A DNA stretch of 63,766 bases, filler included, from Octopus bimaculoides (Eukaryota), in NCBI RefSeq assembly GCF_001194135.2. It is 7 parts of 7 records of this genome, joined end to end, with 100 filler letters (N's around TTAATTAATTAA, not from the genome) between each part and the next. Parts side by side here need not be neighbours in the genome. Positions count along the whole stretch, not along the records: positions 14,741 to 34,749 come from NC_068990.1; 6 more parts are not named here. One strand, 5' to 3'. A model generated the notes under the pieces. It was not told where the DNA came from. It did not search any database and saw only the letters and a list, made by a program, of their open reading frames with translations. Within the stretch, counting starts at the first letter, position 1. Each line of letters opens with the position of its first letter. The position numbers were made by a program, and so were the translations under genes. Positions 14,741 to 34,700 of the stretch are shown here, piece after piece.

Positions 14741-15449
14741 ATTTCGAGTCCAAATTCCCACCATTTGCGCACTTTTGATTTCGCCACTGGTCCCAATTCC
14801 GGCTCCTCCTTGGTTGCAGCCAGCACTGTTGCAACCAACCAGTTTAATTTCTGGTGTAACTCTGGGAATACGTATTTTCACACTTCTTCTTCCTCTATAA
14901 CTTGGTAGTAATGCTATTTTTTCACTTCTTAAAATGTTGGTTGCATGCTTGGTTGCCTCTTCTATAGTGGCGAACCTCACCTCCACCGTATCGAACTTTC
15001 TTCCTCTGTTGATGTACGTGGCTTCATTCACAATTTCACCCAGGCACTCCTCGATTTCCTTTTCCGTCACCATTTTAATTTTACAGGTTTCGACAGCCTG
15101 TGTACGAAACACAACTGTCCTCAGAATTTTTTCTTCTTTAGTCTCTTTTGGGGAGCACAATTTGTGTGAGTCTCCCTCAACTCCTATCAAATTCCTGCTT
15201 CTGGTCACCTCCTCCATATCCAACTTGATTAACTTGGTTTCTAGCGGCACTGGCTTCCTCACTGCAGTGGCCTTGGCATAGCTCTTCATACTGGAGACAC
15301 TACCACTTGCCATAGCAGGGAAAAATGCAGCAGCTCGCGTGAAACGTAACAGTAATAATTCCACAAAAATCACAATTATTTACCGCGACAGTTTTCACAA
15401 AGTAACACAACAGTATTCACAATAATTCACAATAATTCACGGAGCCGTT
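14741..15449 (-). mobile_element. 5' end (UTR + ORF1) of an L1/Tx1-like non-LTR retrotransposon, cut by the scaffold join
   Basis: ATG at 15313 (MASGSVSSMKSYAKAT: SYA motif typical of LINE ORF1 N-termini); RRM-like FDTVEVRFATIEEATKHA..LLPSYRGRRSVKIRI; probable frameshift near 14845 into NWLVATVLAATKEEPELGPVAKSKVRKWWEFGLE; 5' UTR with TGTGAATTAT repeats. Confidence 0.65.
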
Positions 15450-15806: not shown

Positions 15807-16590
15807 CTGGCGAACGGGGTGGGGGAAGGACCAGGACATTTCACACGATCCGATTTTTNNNNNNNNNNNNNNNNNNNNNNNNNNNNNNNNNNNNNNNNNN
15901 NNNNNNNNNNNNNNNNNNNNNNNNNNNNNNNNNNNNNNNNNNNNNNNNNNNNNNNNNNNNNNNNNNNNNNNNNNNNNNNNNNNNNNNNNNNNNNNNNNNN
16001 NNNNNNNNNNNNNNNNNNNNNNNNNNNNNNNNNNNNNNNNNNNNNNNNNNNNNNNNNNNNNNNNNNNNNNNNNNNNNNNNNNNNNNNNNNNNNNNNNNNN
16101 NNNNNNNNNNNNNNNNNNNNNNNNNNNNNNNNNNNNNNNNNNNNNNNNNNNNNNNNNNNNNNNNNNNNNNNAGTTTTCGAACCCTGTGAGATTGATCGTG
16201 TGAATTTTCCGGGTCCTCTGTCCCCAACCCCGTTCGTCAGCGCGCATTTTGTTCATATTCGTTCACTATATGTTGTTTTACACCTATTACACAATTTTTT
16301 TTCATCTTTGTGACCGGGTGTCGAAGTCGGGTTACTGGATCGTGTGAATTATCCGAGTCTGCACCCCCACAAAAATTGAAAAAATAATAGTCTACTAGAT
16401 GTAAGATAATGTGTAGTAAACGTTTATAAAGAAAAAAATTGCGCTGAGGAATGGGGAAGTGGTGAGAGAACTCCAACCACTCCCGATGTGAATTTTCCGA
16501 GTCGTCTCCCCCCTCCCGTTCGCCAGCGTGCATTTTTTTCATATTCGTTTACTACATGTTGTTTTACACCTATGACACTTTTTTTTCTTT
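15807..16590. repeat. Inverted plus direct ~110 bp repeat units around a gap (foldback/MITE-like)
   Basis: 15807-15850 is the reverse complement of GATCGTGTGAA..CCCCGTTCG(T/C)CAG units at 16194-16305 and 16485-16590; partial unit at ~16338. Confidence 0.65.
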
Positions 16591-17046: not shown

Positions 17047-17829
17047 CAGGGGTTGCACAAAATAATGGAAACATCTAGCATCATAGCATCATAAATTTGG
17101 AACTATAAAACCGCCAAAAGGGAAGACTGCAATCAGAAAACCACTACTTTCAAAAACAAACGTTGCAAGGCGTTTAGAGTGGAGCAAAAACCTACAGATT
17201 TGGTCCCTAGAAAAGTGGAAGAATGTTATTTTCTCGGACGAGTCATCCTTTACATTATTTCCGACCACCGGCTGAGTATACGTGTGGAGACGGCCAAAAG
17301 AAGCATTTGACATAGACTGCCTTCTTCCAACTATTAAACATGGAGGAGGATCTGTGATGATCGGGGGGAGGGGGTCTATAGCTTGGAAATCCGCCGGCCC
17401 AAAGGTTTCTCTTCATGGCAGAATTAGTAGTCAAGACTATTTAAGCATTTTCTCTGATCAAATTCATCCTATGTTTGCGGAACTGTTTCCGAAAGGAAAC
17501 GCAATGTTTCAGGATGATAATGCACCAATTCACACAACTAAAGTTGTTACTGAATGGCACGAAGAACGTTCTAGTGAAGTTGAACATTTTATCTGGCCAC
17601 CAGAGTTCCCAGCTCTCAATATTATTGAACATTTATGGTGCATTTTAGAAAAACAAGTAAGGAGTCGATATCCTCCACCATCATCATTACAAGAACTGGA
17701 GACTGTTTTAGCAGAAGAATGGCCAAACATTCCTTTGGAAACAATTCAAACTTTTTATGAGTCCATACCTCGTAGAATTCAAGCTGTAATTACTGCCAGA
17801 GTTGTTTCCATTATTTTGTCCAACTCCTG
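17047..17829 (+). mobile_element. Internally deleted Tc1-type transposon, DD36E spacing (Incomer-like), both TIRs and TA TSDs intact
   Basis: 27-bp TIRs CAGGGGTTGCACAAAATAATGGAAACA / TGTTTCCATTATTTTGTCCAACTCCTG (2 mismatches), TA on both sides; WKNVIFSDES, FQDDNAPIH and LNIIEHLW with 36 residues between D2 and E. Confidence 0.9.
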
Positions 17830-17894
17830 TAGTTGTAAATCATTGCCAAACAGCAGTAATAAGCGCAATTGATACAAACATGGCAAAACTATAA

Positions 17895-18373: not shown

Positions 18374-20570
18374 ACTCTTCAATATGAAATGAAACTCATC
18401 AATAAGACATTTTAACAGAAAATGGTGGATATGTATAGTGATTAACTGAACGCTGTTAAGTTTGTTTCAAAAAAACGTTAGAGGATATAACATCGAAAGT
18501 AGCCTATAGAAAGAGGAGGGGTAAAGGAAAGAAAAAAAACAAATAAATGAGAAATATATAACTATATGTATATGAAACAAAACCATATAGACTCGGAAAA
18601 AGATATATCTAATGAATGTGAAAGGTAAGAAGAAAACTAATGATTAAATTATATATAATGATAGATATCACTTATATGAACTAAAGGTGAGTTTCTGCCA
18701 ATGTTTACATCGGTATGCACGCTCTATAACCGTGTTTACAAGGGGATTTTTAGAAAAATGAATAAGAAATACAATATTTCATTTAGATTGTCTAAGTTAT
18801 CTACTAATGTTGACATTTTCAATGATAAGGCTGAATTTTATAACTCTGCCTTACTTAAAGCAGGTTATACAGAGAAAGTTACCTACATTAATTCCATTCA
18901 ATCTTATTCTACCTTTACTAATGGAGATATGAAATCTATTTGTAAGGATATTAACATGTCAATTTTAATTTATACGCCAAGACCAAACAGAGGAAGGGAA
19001 ATAACCCTTATTTGATCCCTATCTTCGTTCTAACGATAAATCTATGTCTTTCAAAGATAGTTATACTAAGAATAAGGTAACTAATAGTAAAACCATTTGG
19101 TTAATTATTCCTTCCGGGAGGCAAATTAAATCTGATCTTGCTTTACAGTTTCAGGAAGCTATTATTAGGAATTTTCCAAAGAATTCTAGGTATTACTCTA
19201 TTATCAACTCACACACGGTTAGGATTGGTTTTTCCAACACAAAAAATCTCTTATAAATTATCTCTTCACATAATATTAACTTGTTAAATATTGACACATT
19301 TACTAATACTAACATTAATTTAGCTAATACCATCCATCCCCACTAGAAATATTAATAACAAGGTTATTGTCTCTGAAGTCAATTACGACAGAATCTAAAA
19401 TTAAAAATTCTATATACCAGTGTAAAATTACTTCAGGTACCGATGTCTTTTTTATATATGTGTATATAAAAGAGACCACTAAGTGGACTGCTAATGTGCT
19501 AGAAGAAGATCACTTAAAAATTCTCAAAGAAAATTCAGCGAAGCAAAAACTGGCGGGTGAGACTAGTGAAAAATTATAAATACTTAGGTTATCTGTAGAC
19601 CATGGTTTCAAAATCAACACATTCTTAATGAAAGTATGTGTTTCTCTTCAGTACAGACTGCCATAACGATTATAATCCAACAGAACCTCGTGATAGTTGT
19701 CTCCAACAAATGAAAACATGTTTACGGGATTCTATTAATTATAAACAGTAATATTCAAAAGTTTTAGTTTTAGCGCGCTAAAGCCGAAAATATCTCTGCA
19801 GAAAATAATTTCTACATTGAATTTACCAACTTTGAGAAACGTGATTATGGTTAATTAACATAATAGGGTAAAAAAATTTGATATTAATTAATATCAATTC
19901 AGTTATCTAAAAGAATTTCTAACCATTACTCTACAATTAGGGATAGGAATACACGTAACAGTACAGGGCTTAGTAAATTAATTTGGTATCTAAAAGACCA
20001 CAACAAACAATTTAATTTAGATTTGTTGATTCTCTCAATCTCGATACCTTATGAGAAAGGCAAGGAATTCTGTCTTCCCTGTAATTCTGAAATATTTTTT
20101 ATTCTTCTTTCTAAAAATACCCTTGTAAACACGGTTAAAGAGCGTGCTTACCGATGTAAACATTGGCAGAAACACACCTTCAGTTCATATAAGTGATATC
20201 TATCATTATATATAATTTAAACATTAATTTTCTTCTTACATTTCACATTCACTAGGTATATCCTTTTCCAAGTCTATATGGTTATATTTAATATACATAT
20301 AGTTATATACTTCTCATTTATTTGTTTTTTTCTTTTCTTTACCTCTCCTCTTTCGATAGGCTACCTTTGATGTTATATCATCTAACGTTTTTTTTTAAAC
20401 AAACTTAATATCGTTCAGTTAATCACTATACATATCCACCATTTTCTGTTAAAATGTCTTATTGACGAGTTTTATTTCTTCATTTCCCTGAAGAGAAGAT
20501 TACATTGTTTTACACCATTTTATTCCTTTGGAATAATACCAGTGATATCTTCGAAACATGTGCCGGAAGT
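18374..20570 (+). mobile_element. Penelope-like element: decayed RT thumb + GIY-YIG end, 3' pLTR, and an inverted copy of the 3' end at its 5' side
   Basis: RLSKLSTNVDIFNDKAEFYNSALLKAGY; IWLIIP..IIRNFPKNSRYYSIINSHTVRIGFSN; KRISNHYST..NSTGLSKLIWYLKD; PYEKGKEFCLPCNSE..LVN..CKHWQK; 18374-18781 is an inverted repeat of ~20087-20495. Confidence 0.85.
20482..20570 (+). ncRNA. Type I hammerhead ribozyme-like motif in PLE terminus, with extended helix II and one core substitution
   Basis: ATTTCC-CTGAAGA-GAAGAT-[46 nt]-ATCTTC-GAAA-C-ATGT-G-CC-GGAAGT; helix I 6 bp (one G.U), helix II 6 bp; GCC instead of GUC at the cleavage triplet. Confidence 0.6.
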
Positions 20571-20862
20571 AAAAGAATTTGAATGACACCTGTGTTGAAC
20601 TCCATTTATTTATTTATATACATTATACAAAATATTTCACGTAAACCCGAAGTTTCTACCTTTAAATACAAGGAGTTACAACCTTTTTACTTGTGTGATT
20701 TTTTGCTACCCTGGTAACTATTTATCTATTTTTTCCGCGTTGATTGTAAACAAGGGAAAATACACACATCTATTTATATATATGTATGTATGTATAATAT
20801 ATGATACACGTGTACATGCATATGTATATGTATTATTATATCTATGATATATATGTATATAT

Positions 20863-20924
<62 letters not shown>

Positions 20925-21108
20925 TGAAATACACAGAGAGAAATAAACAGCAAAACACAGTTGCATTCATCATATATTTTACATATATTTTAAATAAAAT
21001 TTTAAGTAGCATCTGATGAGATGAACGTTTGCTACGCACCCACGAAACTGCTATTGGAGCTGAGTCAAACCGTGTGTGTGTGTGTGTGCGTGTGTGTGTG
21101 TGTGTGCG

Positions 21109-21141
<33 letters not shown>

Positions 21142-22169
21142 TCATTCATTTGTCAACAATGCAATACACATTAGTTACTAACATTCATAAACCACCTAAC
21201 CTAGAACAACGCTAAACATGGACTCTACGCTCATAATACAAACAAGAGCTATAGCTACAAAATAAGATATTTAATTCTATAGATATCAGAGTGCTATATT
21301 ATTTGCTTGGTGAATAATTTATAAAGTTAGTCTTTATTTGATATAAACTGAACCTATTTACAACTAGTATCTGATTTACATACTTAAACGGATATATATA
21401 TTTGTTTCTTGGAAGCAGGAGGAAAGGTCACAGATGGAATGGTGAATACCTTAGTATCGTGACAAGAGGTAACTATATTTGTCTTGACAGACTTAGAACA
21501 TGGTAATCTCTACCCAGCTTCTGTTAAAGGCAATATACTTCGAGGGTCGCACAATAAATACTTACACTAAACCTCATACTTTGCTCTCTACGCACACGAT
21601 GGCATAGAATACCCTGTCTTATTTAGTTAAGGCATCAGATACTAGTTTACTGAGCACAAATACATTTGGATCAAAATAGGTTTCAGTTTTACACTAAAAA
21701 CATCATCAGAAAGGTCAGCACAAATCATCAGATTCCGGACATCGCCACGATCATATGTGTCTACACCATAAAAATTTATGGATGATTTAGCGAATCACTT
21801 ATGTGTATACAAATAATTAAATGAGGCAGCTTAGTAAGCAGTTTCACCAAAAAGGAAAACAATAATTGTCATTAACTGAGCCCTTATTCCTAACAGTATA
21901 AGTGTTCTAACACTCTCAACAATATATATAATCGTTAATGACAATTATATATATATATATATGTTAAATCTCTGAACGAGGTATGAACAGTAACTGCACG
22001 ACAAGGTGAAGTATATTTGACACTTAAATGTGGCTGACCCCTAAGGGAGGATGTTACTGTTGCTTTTATCCCCAGGAGAACATCTCCTCCAGCTGGCTAT
22101 CGACACACATCTGTGTGTCCTGTCTGTATTTGCAAAGGGAAGGTATCCTTCCCATCTTGATCTGTGATA

Positions 22170-22214
22170 CGTACGGACTCGAGTTTCTGGGTATTTTCCC
22201 GTCCTCAGCGTACG
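22170..22214 (-). ncRNA. Minimal type I hammerhead ribozyme
   Basis: Minus strand CGUACG-CUGAGGA-CGGG-AAAAUA-CCCA-GAAA-CUCGAG-UC-CGUACG; helix I 6/6, palindromic helix III ACUCGAGU, C.A mismatch at base of helix II. Confidence 0.8.
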
Positions 22215-22815
22215 ACAATCGCCGACCTTCGATGCGAAAGATATTCCTTTGCAAATATATATAACTTTTTCCAGTGAAATTCTTCACTGGATTTATCTCT
22301 CTCATCAAAAATCAGTGGNNNNNNNNNNNNNNNNNNNNNNNNNNNNNNNNNNNNNNNNNNNNNNNNNNNNNNNNNNNNNNNNNNNNNNNNNNNNNNNNNN
22401 NNNNNNNNNNNNNNNNNNNNNNNNNNNNNNNNNNNNNNNNNNNNNNNNNNNNNNNNNNNNNNNNNNNNNNNNNNNNNNNNNNNNNNNNNNNNNNNNNNNN
22501 NNNNNNNNNNNNNNNNNNNNNNNNNNNNNNNNNNNNNNNNNNNNNNNNNNNNNNNNNNNNNNNNNNNNNNNNNNNNNNNNNNNNNNNNNNNNNNNNNNNN
22601 NNNNNNNNNNNNNNNNNNNNNNNNNNNNNNNNNNNNNNNNNNNNNNNNNNNNNNNNNNNNNNNNNNNNNNNNNNNNNNNNNNNNNNNNNNNNNNNNNNNN
22701 NNNNNNNNNNNNNNNNNNNNNNNNNNNNNNNNNNNNNNNNNNNNNNNNNNNNNNNNNNNNNNNNNNNNNNNNNNNNNNNNNNNNNNNNNNNNNNNNNNNN
22801 NNNNNNNNNNNNNNN

Positions 22816-22843
22816 CAGGGTTATTTCCCTTCGTCAGCGTTCG
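22816..22843 (-). ncRNA. Hammerhead ribozyme, 3' half lost in the gap
   Basis: Minus strand CGAACG-CUGACGA-AGGG-AAAUAA-CCCU-G then N run. Confidence 0.7.
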
Positions 22844-22952
22844 ATAGCCACTGATCTTTGATGAGAGAGATAAATCCTTGGCAATCTTATATATACTTTT
22901 CCAGTGAAATTCTTCACTGGATTTATCTCTCTCATCAAAAATCAGTGGCTAT

Positions 22953-22997
22953 CGAAGGCTGACGAAGGGAAATAACCCTGAAACCCGGGTCCGTTCG
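22953..22997 (+). ncRNA. Minimal type I hammerhead ribozyme
   Basis: CGAAGG-CUGACGA-AGGG-AAAUAA-CCCU-GAAA-CCCGGG-UC-CGUUCG; intact core, GUC site, helix II 4/4, palindromic helix III ACCCGGGU, helix I 5/6. Confidence 0.85.
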
Positions 22998-23715
22998 TGC
23001 TACAGATCATGATGGGAGGAATAACTTCCCTTGGCAAACAGGACACAGTAGTGTGTCGATAAGCCAGCTGGAGGAGATGTCCTCCTGGGGCTAAAAGCAA
23101 CAGTAACATCCACCCCTAGGGGTCAGCCATACTTAAGTGGCAATATACTACACTTTATCGTGCAGTTACTGTTAATACTTCATTTAGAGTATTAACATTT
23201 CACCTTTTCGATATCAGTGAAGAANNNNNNNNNNNNNNNNNNNNNNNNNNNNNNNNNNNNNNNNNNNNNNNNNNNNNNNNNNNNNNNNNNNNNNNNNNNN
23301 NNNNNNNNNNNNNNNNNNNNNNNNNNNNNNNNNNNNNNNNNNNNNNNNNNNNNNNNNNNNNNNNNNNNNNNNNNNNNNNNNNNNNNNNNNNNNNNNNNNN
23401 NNNNNNNNNNNNNNNNNNNNNNNNNNNNNNNNNNNNNNNNNNNNNNNNNNNNNNNNNNNNNNNNNNNNNNNNNNNNNNNNNNNNNNNNNNNNNNNNNNNN
23501 NNNNNNNNNNNNNNNNNNNNNNNNNNNNNNNNNNNNNNNNNNNNNNNNNNNNNNNNNNNNNNNNNNNNNNNNNNNNNNNNNNNNNNNNNNNNNNNNNNNN
23601 NNNNNNNNNNNNNNNNNNNNNNNNNNNNNNNNNNNNNNNNNNNNNNNNNNNNNNNNNNNNNNNNNNNNNNNNNNNNNNNNNNNNNNNNNNNNNNNNNNNN
23701 NNNNNNNNNNNNNNT

Positions 23716-23718
23716 GTG

Positions 23719-23769
<51 letters not shown>

Positions 23770-23985
23770 TTGCGTGTCTGTGTTTGTCCCCCAACATCGT
23801 TTGACAACCGATGCTGGTGTGTTTACGTCCCCGTAACTTAGCGGTTCGGCAAAACAGACCGATAGAATAAGTACTAGGCTTACAAAGAATAAGTTCTGGG
23901 GTCGATTTGTTCGACTAAAGGCGGTGCTCCAGCATGGCCACAGTCAAATGACTGAAACAAGTAAAAGAGTAAAAGAGTATATATA
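23716..23985 (+). mobile_element. SINE family B 3' half (head in gap)
   Basis: Near-identical to 18100-18297. Confidence 0.85.
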
Positions 23986-24899
23986 TATATATATCATACC
24001 TTCCCAAACTGGGAGATTTCAACATACCGGTGGGCAATGGGCGAATTTCTAGAAAATGATTGATTTGAGCTTTTGGTGGGCGATATGAGCATTTTGTGGG
24101 GGACAATGAAATTTTAGAAATTAAGTCAGCATTTACTGATATCTAGATATGCTTAGAATAAGGATGCACTTTTATCGATCTGACTACTCGCATTGTATTA
24201 AAAAACGGACTTGTTTACCGATCGAATGTTTTTGTCGCTGTCACTGAGATGGTCATCGTGCATGCTAAAAATAGCAGCGAAACAGGCCTAGGCCTTAAAT
24301 CACACTCCATTACAAATCTCTTTTTTGCATAATCGTATGAAGTCCCGCGTATAGAATTCAAATCCGCAAAAATTTTCTGAAAACTCCTAAAAATAAAAAA
24401 AGTTATGAGAGGTTATATGTCATGCGTAATTCTGTGGTTTCATATTAAAATACAAGTGCTATTTTCAGGATGTTGACAAAATGTGCAATCACGCACAAAA
24501 TGACAGCTTTGTATTCGTGTTTCTTGACTGGGTGAAAACGATCAAACTTTAAACCTCTATAACTTTTCAAAAACATTTTTCTGGAAAAGCTGAATTACTC
24601 TAGCAATTTAGCTTGGAAAGATGCCAAATTCTAAAATTTTCGATAAACTTTAATTTTTGAAATGCTGGCAGCCAAACAAAATAGATCCGTATTTGCTCCA
24701 GTAAAGATGTGTTATCTGACTCTGTTCTATTGACTTCTTCTCTTTGAGAATACCATTCTCCCTTTCTGACGCTGTTTCTAGAAATTCATTTTCACATTTT
24801 CGCCTCCGGTCAAGAAAATTTGTCAACAGTACGGTAGTTATTGCACGGAAAGTTATTGCAAGGAAACAGAAACACTTTCATTTATCGTTTAGATTTATT

Positions 24900-26574
24900 C
24901 TCTCTCCTCAGAACTCTCAGTTACCAATGTTCCTTCTTTGCCATCAAACATTGACCCGAAGCAATGAAACCTTCACGCTTGAAGTATCACTTTGATGCAA
25001 AGCATTCTGACAAGAACAAGCCATTATCATACTTTTTGCAACTGAGATCCTCTTTCAAAAAGCAAATACAAACATTCAACACGCTACTCCAGGAAACTAG
25101 TAAACAGGAGAATGACTGGTTTATTGCATCGTACAACATTGCATTGTTTGTTGCTAAGTCTGGGAAGTCTCACAATTGGAGAAACATTACTACGCCCAGT
25201 TATCGAAGAGTTTTTGTCAACCGTTATGCACGAAAAACCCGATAACATTATGAAGAAGATCCCACTTAGTAATAACACAATTTCTTGACACATCTTTGAA
25301 ATAGTCAACGATGTCAAACATCAGCTCATTAATATTCTACACCGTTCTGAGTTTTCTATACAAGTGAATGAGTCAACTGTTGTGGGCAATCAATATTTGA
25401 TGATGGTATGTGTTCGGTATTTCAACGAATACCTTCAACCTTGTAAGGAAATGCTGTTCGCAGACAAATTGCCGCTTGATTCAAAAGGTGCAACTATTTT
25501 TCATGCTCTCAAGTCTTTCCTTTTTGAACATAATATCCTCCTCAGTAATATTCTTGCCTGTGCGTCTGATGGAACCCCTTCGATGATAGGAAGATACAGA
25601 GGTTTTTCATCTCTCCTAAAGCATGAAATTTCCCACCAGACACTAACTGTTCATTGCTTGGTACACGGGCAGCATTTAGTGGCAAAAAATATGAACAGTA
25701 GATTGAATAATGCACTACAGTTAGTTATCAAGAATGTAAACAAATTGAAGTCCAGTCCCTTGTTTGATTGAATTTTCTATCAACTCTGTCTGAGAAATGA
25801 TGAGGACCATACTAAACTCTTATAACATATCGAAGTACCGAAGTGCGGTGGCTGTCAAAAGGAAACTGCGTTTTACGCTTTTTTGATGATACTCCACTAT
25901 CCACTTCGCTGATGGCTGCAAAGTGTGATACCTTTTTTCTTTTTGATATATTCACAAAATTAAATAATTTGAATAAGTGATTGCAAGGAAACAGAAACAC
26001 TCTTATTGATTGTAAATCCTTTATCACTGCCGTCATTTCGAAATTGGGTGTTGTATAAGACTAACATTTCAAAACGTCAATTCCATAAATTTCCACAACT
26101 TGATTCTTTGAAAGATGAATTGGTTGATGAGGATTTAACTACATATCGCAACTATTTGCAATCATTGCACAATGACATGGTGGAGTGATTTCAAGATGTT
26201 ATTACGCTGGATATTCCAAATTGGTATAGCAGTCCGTTTGAGGTCGATGCAGTCGATTGCGAGGATGATGTCCAGGAAGAATTGATAGAATGACAAAATG
26301 ACAATGATGCCGCAATGTGATATCACCGCAATGGCAAAGAAGGTGTATATTGAATTCCTACCGTAGTCTGTGGAAACATCTGAAATTACTTTTACTTGCT
26401 TTCCCTACCTCATACCTTGTTGAATCTGGTTTTAAACATGTTGGAACTTTATTTTCCCATAAAAGAATTGGAGTGGATGTGATACAACGAGGAGACTTGC
26501 GGCTAAAGTTGACAAGTTTGAAACCGAATATATCTGCACTAGTTGCATCGCACCAGACACATGGTTCTCATTAA
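24900..26574 (+). pseudogene. Buster/SPIN-like hAT transposase, multiple frameshifts and stops
   Basis: MKPSRLKYHFDAKH (BED finger end), IPLSNNTI, FSIQVNEST, SDGTPSMIG, VHCLVHGQHL, AFPTSYLVESGF, GDLRLKLTSLKPNI..HQTHGSH*. Confidence 0.92.
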
Positions 26575-27864: not shown

Positions 27865-28968
27865 CAATCATTAATTACTTTTGCAGTGGTAGTTCTGATC
27901 AATAGTTCATTTGGAGAAAATGAAAATTAGTGTAAAAGAAAGCGCAAGTTACCAGAAGTTAATATGTCTGCATAATATAGGGTTAACGTTAGAATTTTAT
28001 TCACACTAATGGCAAAACTAAACCAACAATAAGGGGTTTGTAAACAACCGCATATTTAGTCTAAGCTTCACTAACAGAGCAAAAAGTCTACGATATAGTG
28101 TGTGTGTCAAATGATAGAAGGGCGGGGCGTCCTATGGGATTTGTGTTGGGGTGTCATGGGGGGGTTTACACAGGTAGGCGATGGAGCATTTTTTGGTTGA
28201 TAGGTGGGCAATATTGCAATTTGGCGCAAAAAGTTTGAGAAACACTGATATATATGATTATATATATATAAAGATTGAATAAAAACACAATAGAGGACAA
28301 TAAAACATTCTGACAGATAGACGATACAAAGACGGACAGGAAAAACAACAGTAAGAAAGACAGGCAAAATAAGTTGGGTCAATTGTGGCCTTCTTTCCTC
28401 AGTCAAGTTACCAGAAGTCTTTACAGTTTCGGGCAGCTACACTTGAGACAGTTCGATCTGGTTGCCTCCCCCCCCCCAAAAAAAAGTCTAACCTAAGAGC
28501 ATTAGATTTTTTTGTGAGAAAGCTAGCGAATGTGTACGGCAACAAGACCAGAAACGGAGAACATGGTTCACAGTTACAAATACAAACAACAAGAAAATAA
28601 CAACAGGTGTCCTTCGACTGAGAACGAATCAAATAGAGCTGGTGTGTATGAAGTGAAAGCCTAAAGGCAGGAACATAGGAGATGGACATAAGAGGTGTTG
28701 ACGGTCGGCAGTCAGGTCAAGAAAGAAAGATCATGGCTGGCCGGATATCGGTCACGTGGAAGGAGGAGAGAGGGGTATGGGCAGTGGAATTGAAGGATTA
28801 GAAAAAAATCAGAGACAAAGGGAAAGGTACAAAGGAGATAAACGAGGGGGAAAAAGTAGCAGTTAAAGAGAGTGCCAAGAAATGTGTGAGCGAGAGAGAG
28901 GGGTCGAGAAAAAGAAAAGAGAAAGAATGAGGGGGAATAAAAGATAGAGTAAGAGTCGTAAATATATA

Positions 28969-29023
<55 letters not shown>

Positions 29024-29757
29024 ACATATACATACAAACGTACACACATACACACACATACATACTCTCTCTCACACACACACATGTATGTTATGTTATG
29101 TTCTGTTAAGAACGTAGTAGAGTACAGTGTGATGCTCGTCCACCTTCAGATTTCAATCCAGTAGTAGTAGTATTATAGTCACTGCCAGATTTACGTTGGG
29201 GCTTTTGCAGTGTATGAATAGATAACTGAATAAGTTGGAGTCAACAAGGAGTACAGTTGGACATTTATTTGTAATCACTACAATTGTTTCCACGCAACAT
29301 AGTTCACCAGGCTTGCAAGTATTTAGCTTTGTAACCGTTTCCCTTTATGAGATCTAGTTGTCTTTCCTCAGGCGATATGTAAATATTATCTCCGTAAACT
29401 CAAATTCTCGGCTTCAAGTGCATCCTATCTGCCTGTCATATATCAAGAGATGTGTTATGGCTGAAAATCTGTTGATAAACTGCTTTGAATGAATGGGTGG
29501 GGTGGGGCGGTGGTTTTGCTATTGAAGTTTATGTTAAAGAGATTGGCATTTGAGTTCCATGTACTGTTGATTTATTCTTCATGGTTGGTTACACTTGCGA
29601 TTGTCTTTGGCTGACCTTCAAGAATTCACCGGTCATTCGGTTGGTTGGCTTACATGTACACATACTTATATTTGTCTATATTTACATTTATACACACTCA
29701 TATGTACAGATACATGCTCACACACACATATATACATCTTTGTACATACTCATGCTC

Positions 29758-29806
<49 letters not shown>

Positions 29807-31702
29807 CAGATACATATATACACTTTCCCTCCACCCAATTTAATTTGTAGGCTTGGATTATCCTGAGACAATAGTAAAAGTTATCCAAGATGTCATGCTG
29901 CGGATTGATACCTGTAACCTCCTACATGCAATATAACCATGACCATTCGGCCAACACATGTTTCTGGACGCAATCGTGAGAAAGCACATTTAATACATTT
30001 AAAATTTATTTAGTAGGAAGCAGCTGATCATTCTTTCCGTTGTCACTGTGATTCTCGTGCAAGCATGACATCTTTCAGGTAGCATAAGGATCTAAATCAT
30101 GGTCCATTTCCGTTTTAGAAATTTGAGAGTGTACACATTGATTATCGTAGACATTCTCTTTCCCATAACAACTGTTGTCCCTCGTGACTTCTGCTATTCT
30201 TTTTACTTATTCTGTTATTCTCTACTTTTATGCAGCACTACAAATAAATATATTTCAATCTCTCTCTCCTTTCTTTTCTCGCATAAAAATAATTTATTTC
30301 AATTTGTAAACCTTTGTCATTTATTCACACAAACCATTATTAGTCACCCCGAGTGTGTGACTAATACGCACATTATCACCAATGTGTGTATGAGTGTGAG
30401 AGAGAGCCAGATGTATGTGTCTCTGTGTGCAGTATGAACGTGGCACTGTATGTGAGTGTGTGTTGTTATGTGTATTTGTGTGTATCTGTAGATCTGTGTA
30501 ATGGTTAAAATAATTCATTGCAATAAAGACAATAAAGAGAGGTAACTTAAGAAAAACTTAACCAATAGATCAAAAGAGATCGATTAAGTAAATATCAGTC
30601 TGGTCATTGCTGTAATTTCTAAGCACATGTATAGACCGACCTCTCATATAACCATGCTCCAGACAGTAAAGGAATAAAAAAGGTAAACATAAAGACATGC
30701 TAATATATAAACAGTTATGTTTTTAAATATATTCACATACATACACAATAATATGAACTACTTACACGCACTTAAGCACATATATCCACTCCTTTATTTA
30801 TTGACTAACAATGTAAACTATGTATTGTTTCGTCGTATAAAATGGGTTGGTTAATACGATTTTGTCCAGGAATCACGTTTCCAAATTTTAATTTCACCCC
30901 ATCTCCACCGCAATTTCTTAATTTGTAACTTTTTGGATTTTTTTTTTTTATCTACGTAGAAAAATACAGAGAATATGAATCTGGAAATATATATATTTTC
31001 TCTTATAGTTTAATTTTTCATAAAGAAACACTCAATGCCCCTTCCCCACTTCACCCACCTATCGTCTACCAGCTTTCAAAAAGCTAAAATCTCCCAATCT
31101 TTCACTTTTGTCTGATGTTTCCTGCATGCGTAGAATTCTACTGAAATAGCAAACTTAAAAAATACCAGACCACCACCAAGAAAACCCTACATGCTAGAAA
31201 CAACAGGTAAACGATATTATTTCTAAAGAAACTTCCCCGCTTTCCAAAAAGCTAAAAGTGAAACATTGGGAGTGTGTAACTTTTTAAAAGTGGTGAAGTG
31301 ATGGGTAAAATTGCTAAAGGTTCGTACTCTCTGTTTTTTTCAATGGATGACCAAGACAAATATTTGAAAAAAGTAAAAAATGAATTTGGCGTGGAGAGGG
31401 AGAAAATTAAAATATTGAGAACGTGTTTTGTGGGTGAAATCCTAAACCCCTTTATCGCAAACATAGGAATCGGATGAAAATTAGGAAAAAAACATGGTGG
31501 GGTGGAGATGTCACCTCGGACATACTAGAAAGAAGAGGTAAAAGACAAGATTTCTAGGAAAATTTCCTTTTAAGTTTATATCGAAGATCAGGTTTTTAAA
31601 TACGCTCATCACAAACACAAATTACACAGTAATCGGATTTGAGCAGTAAATTTGCGCGTACACACAGCAAAAATCAACATAATTCGTACAGAAGTTTTGC
31701 CT

Positions 31703-33617: not shown

Positions 33618-34236
33618 AAAGTACAGAATGTTATAAAATTGACGATTGAGTGAAAGTTGAATTCCAAGAAAATTCAGAAGGCATAATTCAATTTTTCATA
33701 CAAAAATAATCTATTTTACAATTTTGAAACGAATGCTGAACCAAGTGTATAGAAAGGAATATGCTGCTGTTGTGAACGTTAATTTAAAACATTTTCTCAA
33801 GGATTTATATAGCAAGACATTTGACATAACTATATATTTTTTAACTCTGTAACGTTATAGGCTGTAGAATAAGTACTAACTAACGTAGTAAAAAGGTTGT
33901 GTGGTGTTGATACTCACAGTGATGAAAAAGATAGCACGAATACGATAAGGAGTATTAAAAAAGCATTATCTTCAAACTGATTAGAAGGCGTGGAATAATA
34001 TTTCTGTGATTATATTGAAAGAGCCACTGAGGCTTTCTACTACGCCAAGTTTCCGAATTTGTTATAATAACCAGAATAACATTTTTTCAGATATATTTGC
34101 AAGTATTGTAAGTGCTGTTAAATCAGCCAAATCTTCATGCTGGTAGTACTTCAATGTGAACACCGTTGTTCGTTAAAAGTCCTGGCCACAACTAAACTGT
34201 TTCAAAATCGGTGCGTTTCACTGTTGGGTGGGGTTA

Positions 34237-34313
<77 letters not shown>

Positions 34314-34700
34314 TATACATTAACGCACACCTCAAGCCTGTCTCTGTCTCTGTCCCTGTGTGTGTCTGTCTCTGTCTTTAGATGTGTGTGTGTCAGTCGT
34401 CACAAAAATGTATGCATACTGACAGACAGGTACACCGTCACACATATATTTGTCAGTCATCGGCCTAACGTAGGTAACGAACGCGCGAAGACACTCATAT
34501 AGAAAAAGTGATGACGTTGTAGTGGTGGTATAAAATATCGTTTACGATAGGTGACTAAAAGAATAATTATAATATTACATTTTTGTAATGCAAATATATG
34601 TATGAAAATATAGCTTAGTTGGTAGCCAAAAGCTTACTGAATCTTTTGATATCCCATACGTCAAAATCGGCATCTTGGTTTTGAAATGTGTAAGGAACAT

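What the first reader, a model, noticed from the sequence alone, without database searches (positions are those of the whole stretch)
22170..22997. Covarying minimal hammerhead ribozymes with palindromic helix III
Seen: three CUGANGA...GAAA...GUC hammerhead cores (22170-22214 minus, 22816-22843 minus and cut by the gap, 22953-22997 plus). Copies differ by compensatory changes: helix I CGAACG/CGUUCG vs CGUACG/CGUACG, and helix III ACCCGGGU vs ACUCGAGU, both self-complementary. Known: minimal type I hammerheads with a palindromic short helix III occur in PLE termini and are reported to cleave as dimers. Inference: the fold has been under selection in this family, and the plus copy (intact core, GUC) may still self-cleave.
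Basis: partly seen in the sequence, partly recalled or inferred. Interest (0 to 1): 0.85.

Follow-up and report, generated by a model that had tools for sequence, protein, structure and literature searches.

The report
Hammerhead ribozymes in octopus retroelement copies
Three copies of a small self-cutting RNA motif (type I hammerhead) sit head-to-head in a roughly 300-base non-coding octopus repeat inserted in a TA microsatellite; this is an ordinary, decaying example of the ribozyme-carrying retroelements already known from many animals.

Summary
Two complete hammerhead motifs (A: 22170-22214 minus; C: 22953-22997 plus) and one cut by the gap (B: 22816-22843 minus) are present. A strict descriptor finds only A and C in the piece and nothing in 300 simulated pieces.

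A and C differ at 18 of 67 positions. None of the 12 invariant core bases changed, and 4 base pairs changed on both sides while staying paired (P about 6e-4).

The host is an Octopus genome. The motif has the canonical invertebrate type I design of non-LTR retrozymes, not the PLE "minimal" variant.

Each motif heads a non-coding element with a ~200-nt tail. Copies lie head-to-head with tails outward, bounded by (TA)n/(TG)n. That is the signature of Penelope-like-element integration. No PLE ORF lies in the 20 kb.

Selection on the fold in the family is supported. Self-cleavage of the plus copy is doubtful, for four reasons:
- G·G mismatch in helix I next to the core.
- The monomer is not predicted to fold as a hammerhead.
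- No same-sense partner is visible.
- An antisense copy ~110 nt upstream would lock it into a -117 kcal/mol hairpin.

Verdict: new member of a known kind, modest interest.

The parts
21946..21962 (.). (TA)n microsatellite at the outer (3') end of copy A; presumed insertion target
   Evidence: Sequence read. Homology between copies A and C stops at ...TTAACAT (21961).
21961..22169 (-). Non-coding tail of copy A (3' part of the element, ends ...TTAACAT)
   Evidence: 86% identical to the tail of copy C. No tRNA. No long ORF with a Pfam domain.
22159..22225 (-). Hammerhead copy A with the closing stem of helix I. The 45-nt motif is 22170-22214. Predicted cut is after C17 = 22176, between 22176 and 22175 on the minus strand. 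C·A mismatch at 10.1/11.1.
   Evidence: Rfam Hammerhead_1 full-length match at 20 bits, E 0.013, below the gathering score of 34. Pair counts.
22215..22318 (.). A-side head-to-head junction: diverged spacer, AT-rich 23 nt, small 8-bp hairpin (22271-22290), then a plus-sense spacer identical to 22921-22948
   Evidence: Direct repeat D5 and inverted repeats I4 and I19. Alignment.
22319..22815 (.). Assembly gap (497 N). The flanks are not continuous. The size fits the missing plus-sense ribozyme, two tails and the rest of copy B (about 468 nt).
   Evidence: The arithmetic uses the lengths of copy C and is an inference.
22816..22843 (-). Hammerhead copy B, 5' 28 nt only (helix I 5' strand CGAACG, CUGACGA, helix II). 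The 3' part lies in the gap.
   Evidence: Differs from the reverse complement of C at 22839 and 22856 only.
22816..22980 (.). Near-perfect inverted repeat: arms 22816-22877 and 22919-22980 (62 nt, 97%), with a 41-nt centre that overlaps the small hairpin 22901-22920
   Evidence: I2. RNA fold of 22816-23010 gives -117.4 kcal/mol, z -18.8. This is the cause of the sub-threshold MIR5380 and MIR169_8 matches.
22942..23008 (+). Hammerhead copy C with closing stem. The 45-nt motif is 22953-22997. Predicted cut is between C17 = 22991 and 22992. G·G mismatch at 22957/22993.
   Evidence: No Rfam match at E<=10.
22998..23224 (+). Tail of copy C. Homology with A ends at 23198 (...TTAACAT). 23199-23224 runs on and ends in 'cagtgaagaa', which equals the start of the small hairpin read on the minus strand.
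   Evidence: Fold z-score -3.5. The link to the hairpin is my reading of the sequence.
23715..23787 (.). (TA)n(TG)n microsatellite on the far side of the second gap (23225-23714); the other edge of the presumed target

Best explanation
These are copies of a short, non-coding, hammerhead-bearing retroelement of an Octopus genome. It is a retrozyme-like element or PLE-derived terminal sequence that depends on the reverse transcriptase/endonuclease of Penelope-like elements.

Each copy consists of about 30-75 nt of leader, a canonical invertebrate type I hammerhead, and a ~200-nt tail ending ...TTAACAT.

In the family's active source RNAs the ribozyme would work as a double hammerhead. Two same-sense copies pair through the self-complementary helix III (ACCCGGGU or ACUCGAGU) and swap helix I strands. 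The cut falls after C17 and releases unit-length RNA of about 338 nt (inferred), which may circularise.

The genomic arrangement is head-to-head, with tails outward, inside a (TA)n/(TG)n microsatellite. That is the expected product of PLE-type integration, in which both strands of an AT-rich target are cut and both prime reverse transcription.

The copies at this locus are decaying relics. A and C each carry one mismatch next to the core. The inverted layout would bury the ribozyme in a long hairpin in any read-through transcript.

Shown: the motifs, their improbability by chance, the covariation, the inverted anatomy, the microsatellite flanks, the octopus origin. Inferred: PLE mobilisation, the two-strand priming origin, the 338-nt unit, dimer cleavage.
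For: - Motif and significance: (0 hits in 300 simulations). One search gives a full-length Hammerhead_1 match with the same 6 bp / 14 nt / 8-nt palindrome layout.
- Selection on the fold: A and C differ at 18 of 67 positions, with 0 changes in 12 invariant core bases (P 0.015) and 4 compensatory pairs (P 6e-4), joint P 4e-5. For the 45-nt motif alone the joint P is 0.002. No compensatory change occurs in any of the 57 pairs RNAalifold predicts for the whole element. The ribozyme region is 73% identical, the tail 86%.
- Dimer logic: RNAcofold MFE of C+C (-28.7) and A+A (-28.9) is the double hammerhead, with an 8-bp intermolecular helix III. A+C shows no intermolecular pairing. Monomers prefer non-hammerhead folds.
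- Element anatomy. GC is 42-43%. No tRNA. No other copy in the piece.
- Host: a transposon ORF in the piece is 85-91% identical to Octopus bimaculoides proteins. An antisense ORF across copy C is 89% identical to the O. bimaculoides 'protein' A0A0L8IHK6, which is another copy of the repeat.
- Literature: canonical type I HHRs with 6-bp helix I, 4-bp helix II and short palindromic helix III that act as dimers; dual HHRs 100-700 bp apart on opposite strands (PMC4209133). Invertebrate retrozymes of about 300 bp, GC <45%, helix III of 2 bp plus tetraloop (PMC7229834). Inverted 5'-truncated copies, microsatellite bias and assembly trouble (PMC8557442). A PLE enzyme cuts AT-rich DNA and extends both strands (PMC11167929). 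Retrozymes related to PLE pLTRs (bioRxiv 10.64898/2026.07.22.740005). 235 Hammerhead_1 loci were annotated in the giant squid genome (PMC6962438).
Against: - Only two complete copies and one partial copy could be compared, so covariation rests on one pairwise comparison. The closing stem was defined after seeing the sequences.
- The Rfam score is below threshold for A and absent for B and C.
- The 10.1/11.1 pair is A-U or C·A rather than the usual G-C.
- No direct tandem repeat, the defining layout of retrozymes, is visible. The only hint is a 10-nt match at the contig end.
- No PLE ORF lies within 20 kb, and no octopus PLE consensus was available to test homology of the tail.
- Both head-to-head junctions share the same breakpoints. 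That needs a later duplication or a dimer that spreads as a unit, not two independent insertions.
- Two assembly gaps hide a third of the cluster.
Confidence: 0.75

Rival explanations
1. The copies are 5'-truncated ends (pLTR fragments) of an autonomous Penelope-like element, not a separate non-autonomous retrozyme-like family.
For: PLE insertions are heavily 5'-truncated. They often carry an inverted truncated copy and prefer microsatellites (PMC8557442). The HHR sits in the pLTR. PLEs expanded in Octopus at about 0.2 JC distance (PMC13282606), similar to the A-C divergence.
Against: The ribozyme has the canonical retrozyme design, not the PLE min-HHR design. No RT or GIY-YIG remnant is near it. 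The 10-nt link from the tail back to the leader hints at a ~338-nt circularly permuted unit, far shorter than a PLE.
Confidence: 0.2
2. The plus copy C, or the locus as a whole, is a working self-cleaving ribozyme in vivo.
For: The core is intact with GUC at the cleavage site, helix II is 4 bp, and the C+C homodimer folds as a double hammerhead. Retrozyme HHRs with a mismatch at the base of helix II still exist in 60,000 copies in axolotl. A PLE HHR needed its protein to cleave. Weak motifs are therefore not necessarily dead.
Against: G·G at pair 2.2/1.2, where copy B has the pairing C, so this is a private decay mutation. The monomer hammerhead fold is 6.7 kcal/mol above the MFE. No same-sense partner lies in readable sequence. 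The antisense copy B would sequester it. Rfam gives no match.
Confidence: 0.12
3. Part of the picture is an assembly artefact. The third copy B and the 97% palindrome are a fold-back or collapsed-repeat product, and the true locus holds one inverted pair (A minus, C plus).
For: The 57 nt before the gap equal 22892-22948 exactly. Contigs end at repeat forks. PLE-type inverted structures are known to break short-read assemblies.
Against: The two arms differ at 2 of 62 positions, which a fold-back of one sequence would not give. B's leader differs from A's by 20-40%, so B is not A. The estimated gap is positive and matches the expected missing parts. Compensatory differences show that A and C derive from different source RNAs, so they were not made in one event.
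Confidence: 0.15
4. The motifs are chance matches within a plain inverted repeat, such as a hairpin-RNA or miRNA-like locus or a foldback DNA element. The hammerhead reading is over-interpretation.
For: Rfam's best hits over 22820-22976 are miRNA precursor models. The hammerhead scores are sub-threshold.
Against: The miRNA hits are far below gathering score (74 vs 150) and are generic for any long hairpin. The full descriptor gives 0 hits in 300 simulations. Copy A, which is not part of the tight palindrome, keeps every core base through 22-27% divergence, with compensatory changes.
Confidence: 0.03

Closest known systems
Non-LTR retrozymes of invertebrates (e.g. Mytilus galloprovincialis 350-390-bp repeats, Acropora 220-240-bp repeats; Cervera & de la Pena 2020, PMC7229834)
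   Same: Canonical type I hammerhead: 6-bp helix I, 4-bp helix II with a 6-nt loop, helix III of 2 bp capped by a palindromic tetraloop. Non-coding. GC 42-43%. Inferred unit of about 338 nt. Mollusc host. Fast-evolving ribozyme sequence with a preserved fold.
   Different: The readable copies are inverted head-to-head, not direct tandem. 10.1/11.1 is A-U or C·A. No expression or circRNA data. The family has not been reported for cephalopods in the papers I could search.
min-HHRs in the pLTRs of Penelope-like elements (Cervera & de la Pena 2014, PMC4209133)
   Same: Type I topology, palindromic 15.2-16.2 region and dimer logic. Pairs of motifs 100-700 bp apart on opposite strands. Many solo copies from truncated elements. 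Families full of compensatory changes.
   Different: PLE min-HHRs have a 6-8 bp helix II with a bulged base after A9, G10.1-C11.1, a short helix I and usually no loop 3. Here helix II is 4 bp without a bulge, and no RT/EN ORF is present.
Satellite type I hammerheads of newts and Schistosoma (Rfam RF00163 Hammerhead_1) and the double-hammerhead mechanism
   Same: Same 45-position layout as the Rfam consensus (aUccag CUGAcGA [14] GAAACGcgCGUC cuggAu). The weak helix III requires pairing of two copies.
   Different: 20 bits for copy A and no match for B and C, against a gathering score of 34. Helix III sequences are CCCGGG / CUCGAG.
Axolotl retrozyme ribozyme HHR_Amex2 (PMC7229834)
   Same: Helix III of 2 bp plus tetraloop, and a non-Watson-Crick pair at the base of helix II (U·U there, C·A in copy A).
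   Different: Vertebrate host, direct tandem repeats of 350 bp, cleavage shown experimentally.

Membership tests
Hammerhead ribozyme, type I (Rfam RF00163) | Conserved core C3 U4 G5 A6 N7 G8 A9 ... G12 A13 A14 A15.1 ... U16.1 H17 | tested here: met
   All core bases are present in A and C, and the first box in B. The only core difference is at the free position N7.
Hammerhead ribozyme, type I (Rfam RF00163) | Three helices around the core, with helix I open-ended | tested here: met
   92.9% of cells are paired over 19 pairs. One mismatch per complete copy: C has G·G in helix I, A has C·A at the base of helix II.
Hammerhead ribozyme, type I (Rfam RF00163) | Score at or above the curated gathering threshold (34 bits) | tested here: not met
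   A scores 20 bits, E 0.013. C and B give no match at E<=10. No match in the whole-piece scan.
Hammerhead ribozyme, type I (Rfam RF00163) | Covariation supporting the helices | tested here: met
   4 pairs changed on both sides and 0 in slid controls. P 6e-4 by simulation. This rests on only two complete sequences.
Hammerhead ribozyme, type I (Rfam RF00163) | Site-specific self-cleavage after H17 | not testable with these tools
   Needs in vitro transcription or RNA end mapping.
Metazoan non-LTR retrozyme | Canonical type I HHR (6-bp helix I, 4-bp helix II, short helix III with palindromic loop) | tested here: met
   compared with the descriptions.
Metazoan non-LTR retrozyme | Direct tandem repeats of about 150-450 bp, each with an HHR | tested here: inconclusive
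   The readable copies are inverted. TRF finds no such array. A 10-nt match of the contig end 23215-23224 to the leader hairpin hints at a second direct unit hidden in gap 23225-23714.
Metazoan non-LTR retrozyme | Non-coding, low GC (<45-50%) | tested here: met
   GC 0.42-0.43. Only short frames without Pfam domains.
Metazoan non-LTR retrozyme | Expression as small circular RNA | not testable with these tools
   No transcriptome access.
Penelope-like element (terminus / pLTR) | RT plus GIY-YIG ORF flanked by the repeats | tested here: not met
   No such ORF or Pfam domain in 14741-34749. Only a Tc1-type DDE_3 remnant and domain-less ORFs were found.
Penelope-like element (terminus / pLTR) | Complex insertion with an inverted 5'-truncated copy; microsatellite or AT-rich target | tested here: met
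   Head-to-head copies with 3' ends outward. (TA)n at 21946-21962 and (TA)n(TG)n at 23715-23787. Compared.
Penelope-like element (terminus / pLTR) | min-HHR design: helix II of 6-8 bp with a bulge after A9, G10.1-C11.1 | tested here: not met
   Helix II is 4 bp (A-U or C·A plus three G-C) with no bulge.
Penelope-like element (terminus / pLTR) | Sequence homology of the tail to the 3' end of an autonomous PLE of the same genome | not testable with these tools
   No eukaryotic genome or repeat library was available. Viral and metagenome scans were empty or hit by chance.

The most novel reading that the evidence does not exclude
The head-to-head dimer itself, not the single unit, is what spreads in octopus. 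Both junctions share identical breakpoints. Its transcripts would fold into long, near-perfect dsRNA hairpins with a ribozyme in each arm. The family would then feed small-RNA or ADAR editing pathways, which are prominent in cephalopods, rather than making circular RNAs. That would be a new lifestyle for hammerhead-bearing retroelements.
Probability: 0.06. Interest if true: 0.6.

Novelty: new member of a known kind. Interest (0 to 1): 0.3.

Why it matters
If confirmed genome-wide, this would add cephalopods to the animals that carry canonical type I hammerhead retroelements. It would also supply a clean example in which subfamilies keep helix III self-complementary but mutually incompatible, which fits dimer-only cleavage. 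The head-to-head, tails-outward layout in an AT-rich microsatellite matches the recent in vitro finding that a PLE enzyme cuts and extends both target strands. This locus is a small genomic illustration of that mechanism acting on a non-autonomous RNA. It does not open a new question. Ribozyme, carrier and insertion signature are all described kinds, and the copies here look dead.

Tried and rejected
- Rfam over the whole piece at E<=10 gave no hammerhead. It returned only sub-threshold miRNA and snoRNA models, caused by the long inverted repeat and by (GT)n/(TA)n runs. Small-window scans recovered only copy A.
- Scans of viral contigs with the ribozyme pattern and with a 19-nt tail word found nothing. 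The single metagenome scan gave one hit, which is a chance match inside a GC-rich bacterial coding region.
- I tried to fish other copies through spurious ORFs. The antisense 57-aa frame found one O. bimaculoides entry, but no DNA is on record for it. Its codons leave the informative third positions undetermined.
- A sense-frame alignment as query found nothing. Exact look-ups of two window ORFs found nothing.
- Pfam on ORFs and stop-free frames around the cluster found no RT or GIY-YIG.
- tRNA search for a SINE head found none.
- An 18/19 match to helix II at 18990-19008 looked like a fourth, decayed copy. It lacks both core boxes, and its alignment score equals the best of 200 shuffles, so I rejected it.
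- Loose core matches at 16190-16240, 21669-21709 and 24863-24911 lack the helices and fail the full descriptor.
- Literature search for the exact ribozyme sequences, and for hammerheads in octopus, returned no specific report.
- A snap-back origin at the small hairpin was rejected. The palindrome is not symmetric about that hairpin, because the 23-nt AT-rich spacer is present on one side only.

Full report
**What is in the sequence**

Reading 21800-23400 confirms the three motifs.
- Copy A (22170-22214, minus): CGUACG-CUGAGGA-CGGG AAAAUA CCCA-GAAA-CUCGAG-UC-CGUACG.
- Copy C (22953-22997, plus): CGAAGG-CUGACGA-AGGG AAAUAA CCCU-GAAA-CCCGGG-UC-CGUUCG.
- Copy B (22816-22843, minus): CGAACG-CUGACGA-AGGG AAAUAA CCCUG, then the 497-N gap.

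A loose core pattern has 7 matches against 0.5 expected. Only A and C pass a full descriptor that requires helix II, a self-complementary helix III and at least 5 of 6 helix I pairs. 300 simulated pieces of the same dinucleotide make-up gave no hit.

C itself has G·G at 22957/22993. Copy A has C·A at the base of helix II.

Beyond helix I there is an internal loop (UAU/U or UGU/U) and a 5-bp closing stem (22945-22949 with 22999-23003, and the equivalent in A). The motif is therefore about 67 nt long, not 45.

**The gap**

The flanks cannot be joined directly. The left flank ends in the leader of a plus-sense copy. The right flank starts in the middle of an antisense ribozyme.

The 57 nt before the gap are identical to 22892-22948, although the sequence further left is only 60-80% similar. 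This is what contigs look like when they stop at forks between repeat copies.

Suppose the gap holds the rest of a plus-sense copy (4 + 45 + 201 nt) and the tail plus the missing 17 nt of copy B (218 nt). That makes about 468 nt, close to the estimated 497. This is an inference. A collapse artefact is a rival, but two facts argue against it:
- The arms of the B/C palindrome differ at two positions (22839/22957 and 22856/22940).
- B's leader is clearly different from A's.

**Is the fold under selection?**

Over the 67 nt, A and C differ at 18 positions (27%). None falls in the 12 invariant core bases, and the only core change is at the free position N7. Four pairs changed on both sides and stayed paired: two in the closing stem, A-U to U-A in helix I, and C-G to U-A in helix III. 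One more went G-U to G-C.

Partners slid by 1-3 columns give no such pair. Random placement of 18 substitutions gives:
- P = 6e-4 for at least 4 compensatory pairs.
- P = 0.015 for sparing the core.
- P = 4e-5 for both together.
- For the 45-nt motif alone, joint P = 0.002.

As an internal control, RNAalifold's structure for the whole element has 57 pairs and none changed on both sides.

The ribozyme region is less conserved (73%) than the tail (86%), so its preserved pairing is not simply slow evolution. The caveats are that there are only two complete sequences and that the closing stem was defined post hoc.

**Dimer logic**

As monomers both motifs prefer other folds. The hammerhead fold scores -4.6 and -6.1 kcal/mol, against MFEs of -11.3 and -12.4.

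RNAcofold's MFE for C+C (-28.7) and A+A (-28.9) is the classical double hammerhead, with an 8-bp intermolecular helix III and swapped helix I strands. A+C shows no intermolecular pairing at all.

The helix III change therefore keeps each lineage compatible with itself and incompatible with the other.

**What carries the ribozyme**

Each motif is followed by a ~200-nt tail ending ...TTAACAT (21961 and 23198). A and C are 80% identical over 284 nt. There is no tRNA head, no coding capacity and GC is 42-43%.

The copies lie head-to-head. On the plus strand the order is:
1. Tail(-)A
2. HHR(-)A
3. Junction
4. [gap]
5. HHR(-)B
6. Junction
7. HHR(+)C
8. Tail(+)C

In both junctions the minus copy reaches a small 8-bp hairpin (22271-22290 and 22901-22920). 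The plus copy starts right after it, at 'ggatttatc'.

The cluster is bounded by (TA)n at 21946-21962 and (TA)n(TG)n at 23715-23787.

The last 10 nt before the second gap (23215-23224, cagtgaagaa) equal the start of that hairpin read on the minus strand. This suggests that C runs on into a further direct unit and that the unit is about 338 nt. I estimate roughly a 0.5% chance of such a match arising by accident. This is only a hint.

**Host and context**

A gag-like ORF at the edge of the piece is 85-91% identical to Octopus bimaculoides proteins. The antisense ORF across copy C is 89% identical to the O. bimaculoides entry A0A0L8IHK6, so the repeat has other copies in that genome. Its implied sequence keeps the core and changes C17 to A and G16.2 to A.

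The rest of the piece holds a Tc1-type DDE_3 remnant, domain-less broken ORFs and many microsatellites. It holds no reverse transcriptase or GIY-YIG endonuclease.

**Comparison with what is known**

Cervera & de la Pena 2014 describe canonical metazoan type I hammerheads exactly like this: helix I 6 bp, helix II 4 bp, helix III 1-2 bp with a small palindromic loop, active as dimers. They also describe distinct 'min-HHRs' of PLE pLTRs, with a long bulged helix II and G10.1-C11.1. They further report pairs of motifs 100-700 bp apart on opposite strands, and families rich in compensatory changes.

Cervera & de la Pena 2020 place the canonical type in non-LTR retrozymes. These have units of about 300 bp with GC <45%. 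Invertebrate helix III is 2 bp plus a tetraloop. Mussel units are 350-390 bp. An axolotl family has a mismatch at the base of helix II.

Craig et al. 2021 describe the PLE insertion signature: 5' truncation, an adjacent inverted truncated copy, microsatellite targets and broken short-read assemblies.

The 2024 Mobile DNA paper shows a PLE enzyme cutting AT-rich DNA and extending both strands. That would yield precisely a head-to-head, tails-outward pair. In the same study the HHR needed the protein to cleave and was dispensable for insertion in vitro.

A 2026 preprint links retrozymes to PLE pLTRs. Hammerhead_1 loci were counted in the giant squid genome, and PLEs are a recognised octopus repeat class.

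I found no paper that describes this octopus family or its sequence.

**Verdict**

The motifs are real, and the family's fold shows the marks of selection. They belong to a known kind: canonical type I hammerheads on short non-coding retroelements inserted by PLE-type machinery.

At this locus they are relics. Each complete copy has a mismatch next to the core. In C the mismatch is a private change, because its twin B has the pairing base. No same-sense partner is readable. A read-through transcript would fold the B/C pair into a 62-bp hairpin (-117 kcal/mol). That hairpin is also why Rfam offers miRNA precursor models here.

Membership in Rfam's Hammerhead_1 fails the curated score for all three copies. 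The claim therefore rests on the descriptor, the covariation and the anatomy.

Noticed in passing
window 23199-23224: After the homology with copy A ends (…TTAACAT, 23198), copy C runs on for 26 nt. It ends in 'cagtgaagaa', identical to positions 2-11 of the small leader hairpin read on the minus strand (22919..22910). This hints at a further direct unit hidden in gap 23225-23714 and at a unit length of about 338 nt.
   Followed up: partly
window 22262-22318 vs 22892-22948: A 57-nt block is 100% identical between the two junctions, although the adjacent leader and ribozyme are only 60-80% alike. Both junctions also share the same breakpoints. The cause could be gene conversion, duplication of the whole inverted dimer, or contigs ending at repeat forks.
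   Followed up: partly
window 22159-22225 / 22942-23008 vs tails: The ribozyme region is more diverged between A and C (73% identity) than the tail (86%), yet it keeps its core and pairing. This echoes the reported hypervariability of retroelement hammerheads. Copy A keeps 11 CpG against 7 in C.
   Followed up: partly
window 18990-19008: An 18/19 match to CGA-AGGGAAAUAACCCU of copy C lies at the end of a broken ORF. It lacks CUGA and GAAA, and its alignment score is no better than the best shuffle. Probably chance.
   Followed up: yes
window 18680-20193 (+): A run of stop-free frames (111, 83, 83 and 102 aa) looks like one decayed transposon ORF. It has no Pfam domain. From memory the last frame resembles a C-x-x-C-containing module seen in invertebrate transposon proteins. 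This is unverified.
   Followed up: partly
window 14741-15379 (-): A gag-like ORF cut by the piece edge is 85-91% identical to three Octopus bimaculoides UniRef proteins, two of them named CCHC-type domain proteins. This identifies the host genus.
   Followed up: yes
window 17276-17869 (+): Tc1/mariner-type transposase remnant (Pfam DDE_3, 38.9 bits).
   Followed up: yes
window 24955-25768 and 26308-26571 (+): Stop-free frames of 96, 160 and 88 aa without any Pfam match. By eye they look like pieces of one decayed transposase-like gene. Not classified.
   Followed up: partly
window 20763-20975, 28952-29148, 29707-29879, 34201-34393: (GT)n, (TA)n and related runs produce many sub-threshold Rfam matches to mir-297, mir-466, mir-3149, SCARNA7 and others. 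All are far below gathering scores and are artefacts of simple repeats.
   Followed up: yes
window 16190-16240 (-), 21669-21709 (-), 24863-24911 (-): Loose CUGANGA...GAAA...UC matches without the required helices. They fail the full hammerhead descriptor.
   Followed up: yes
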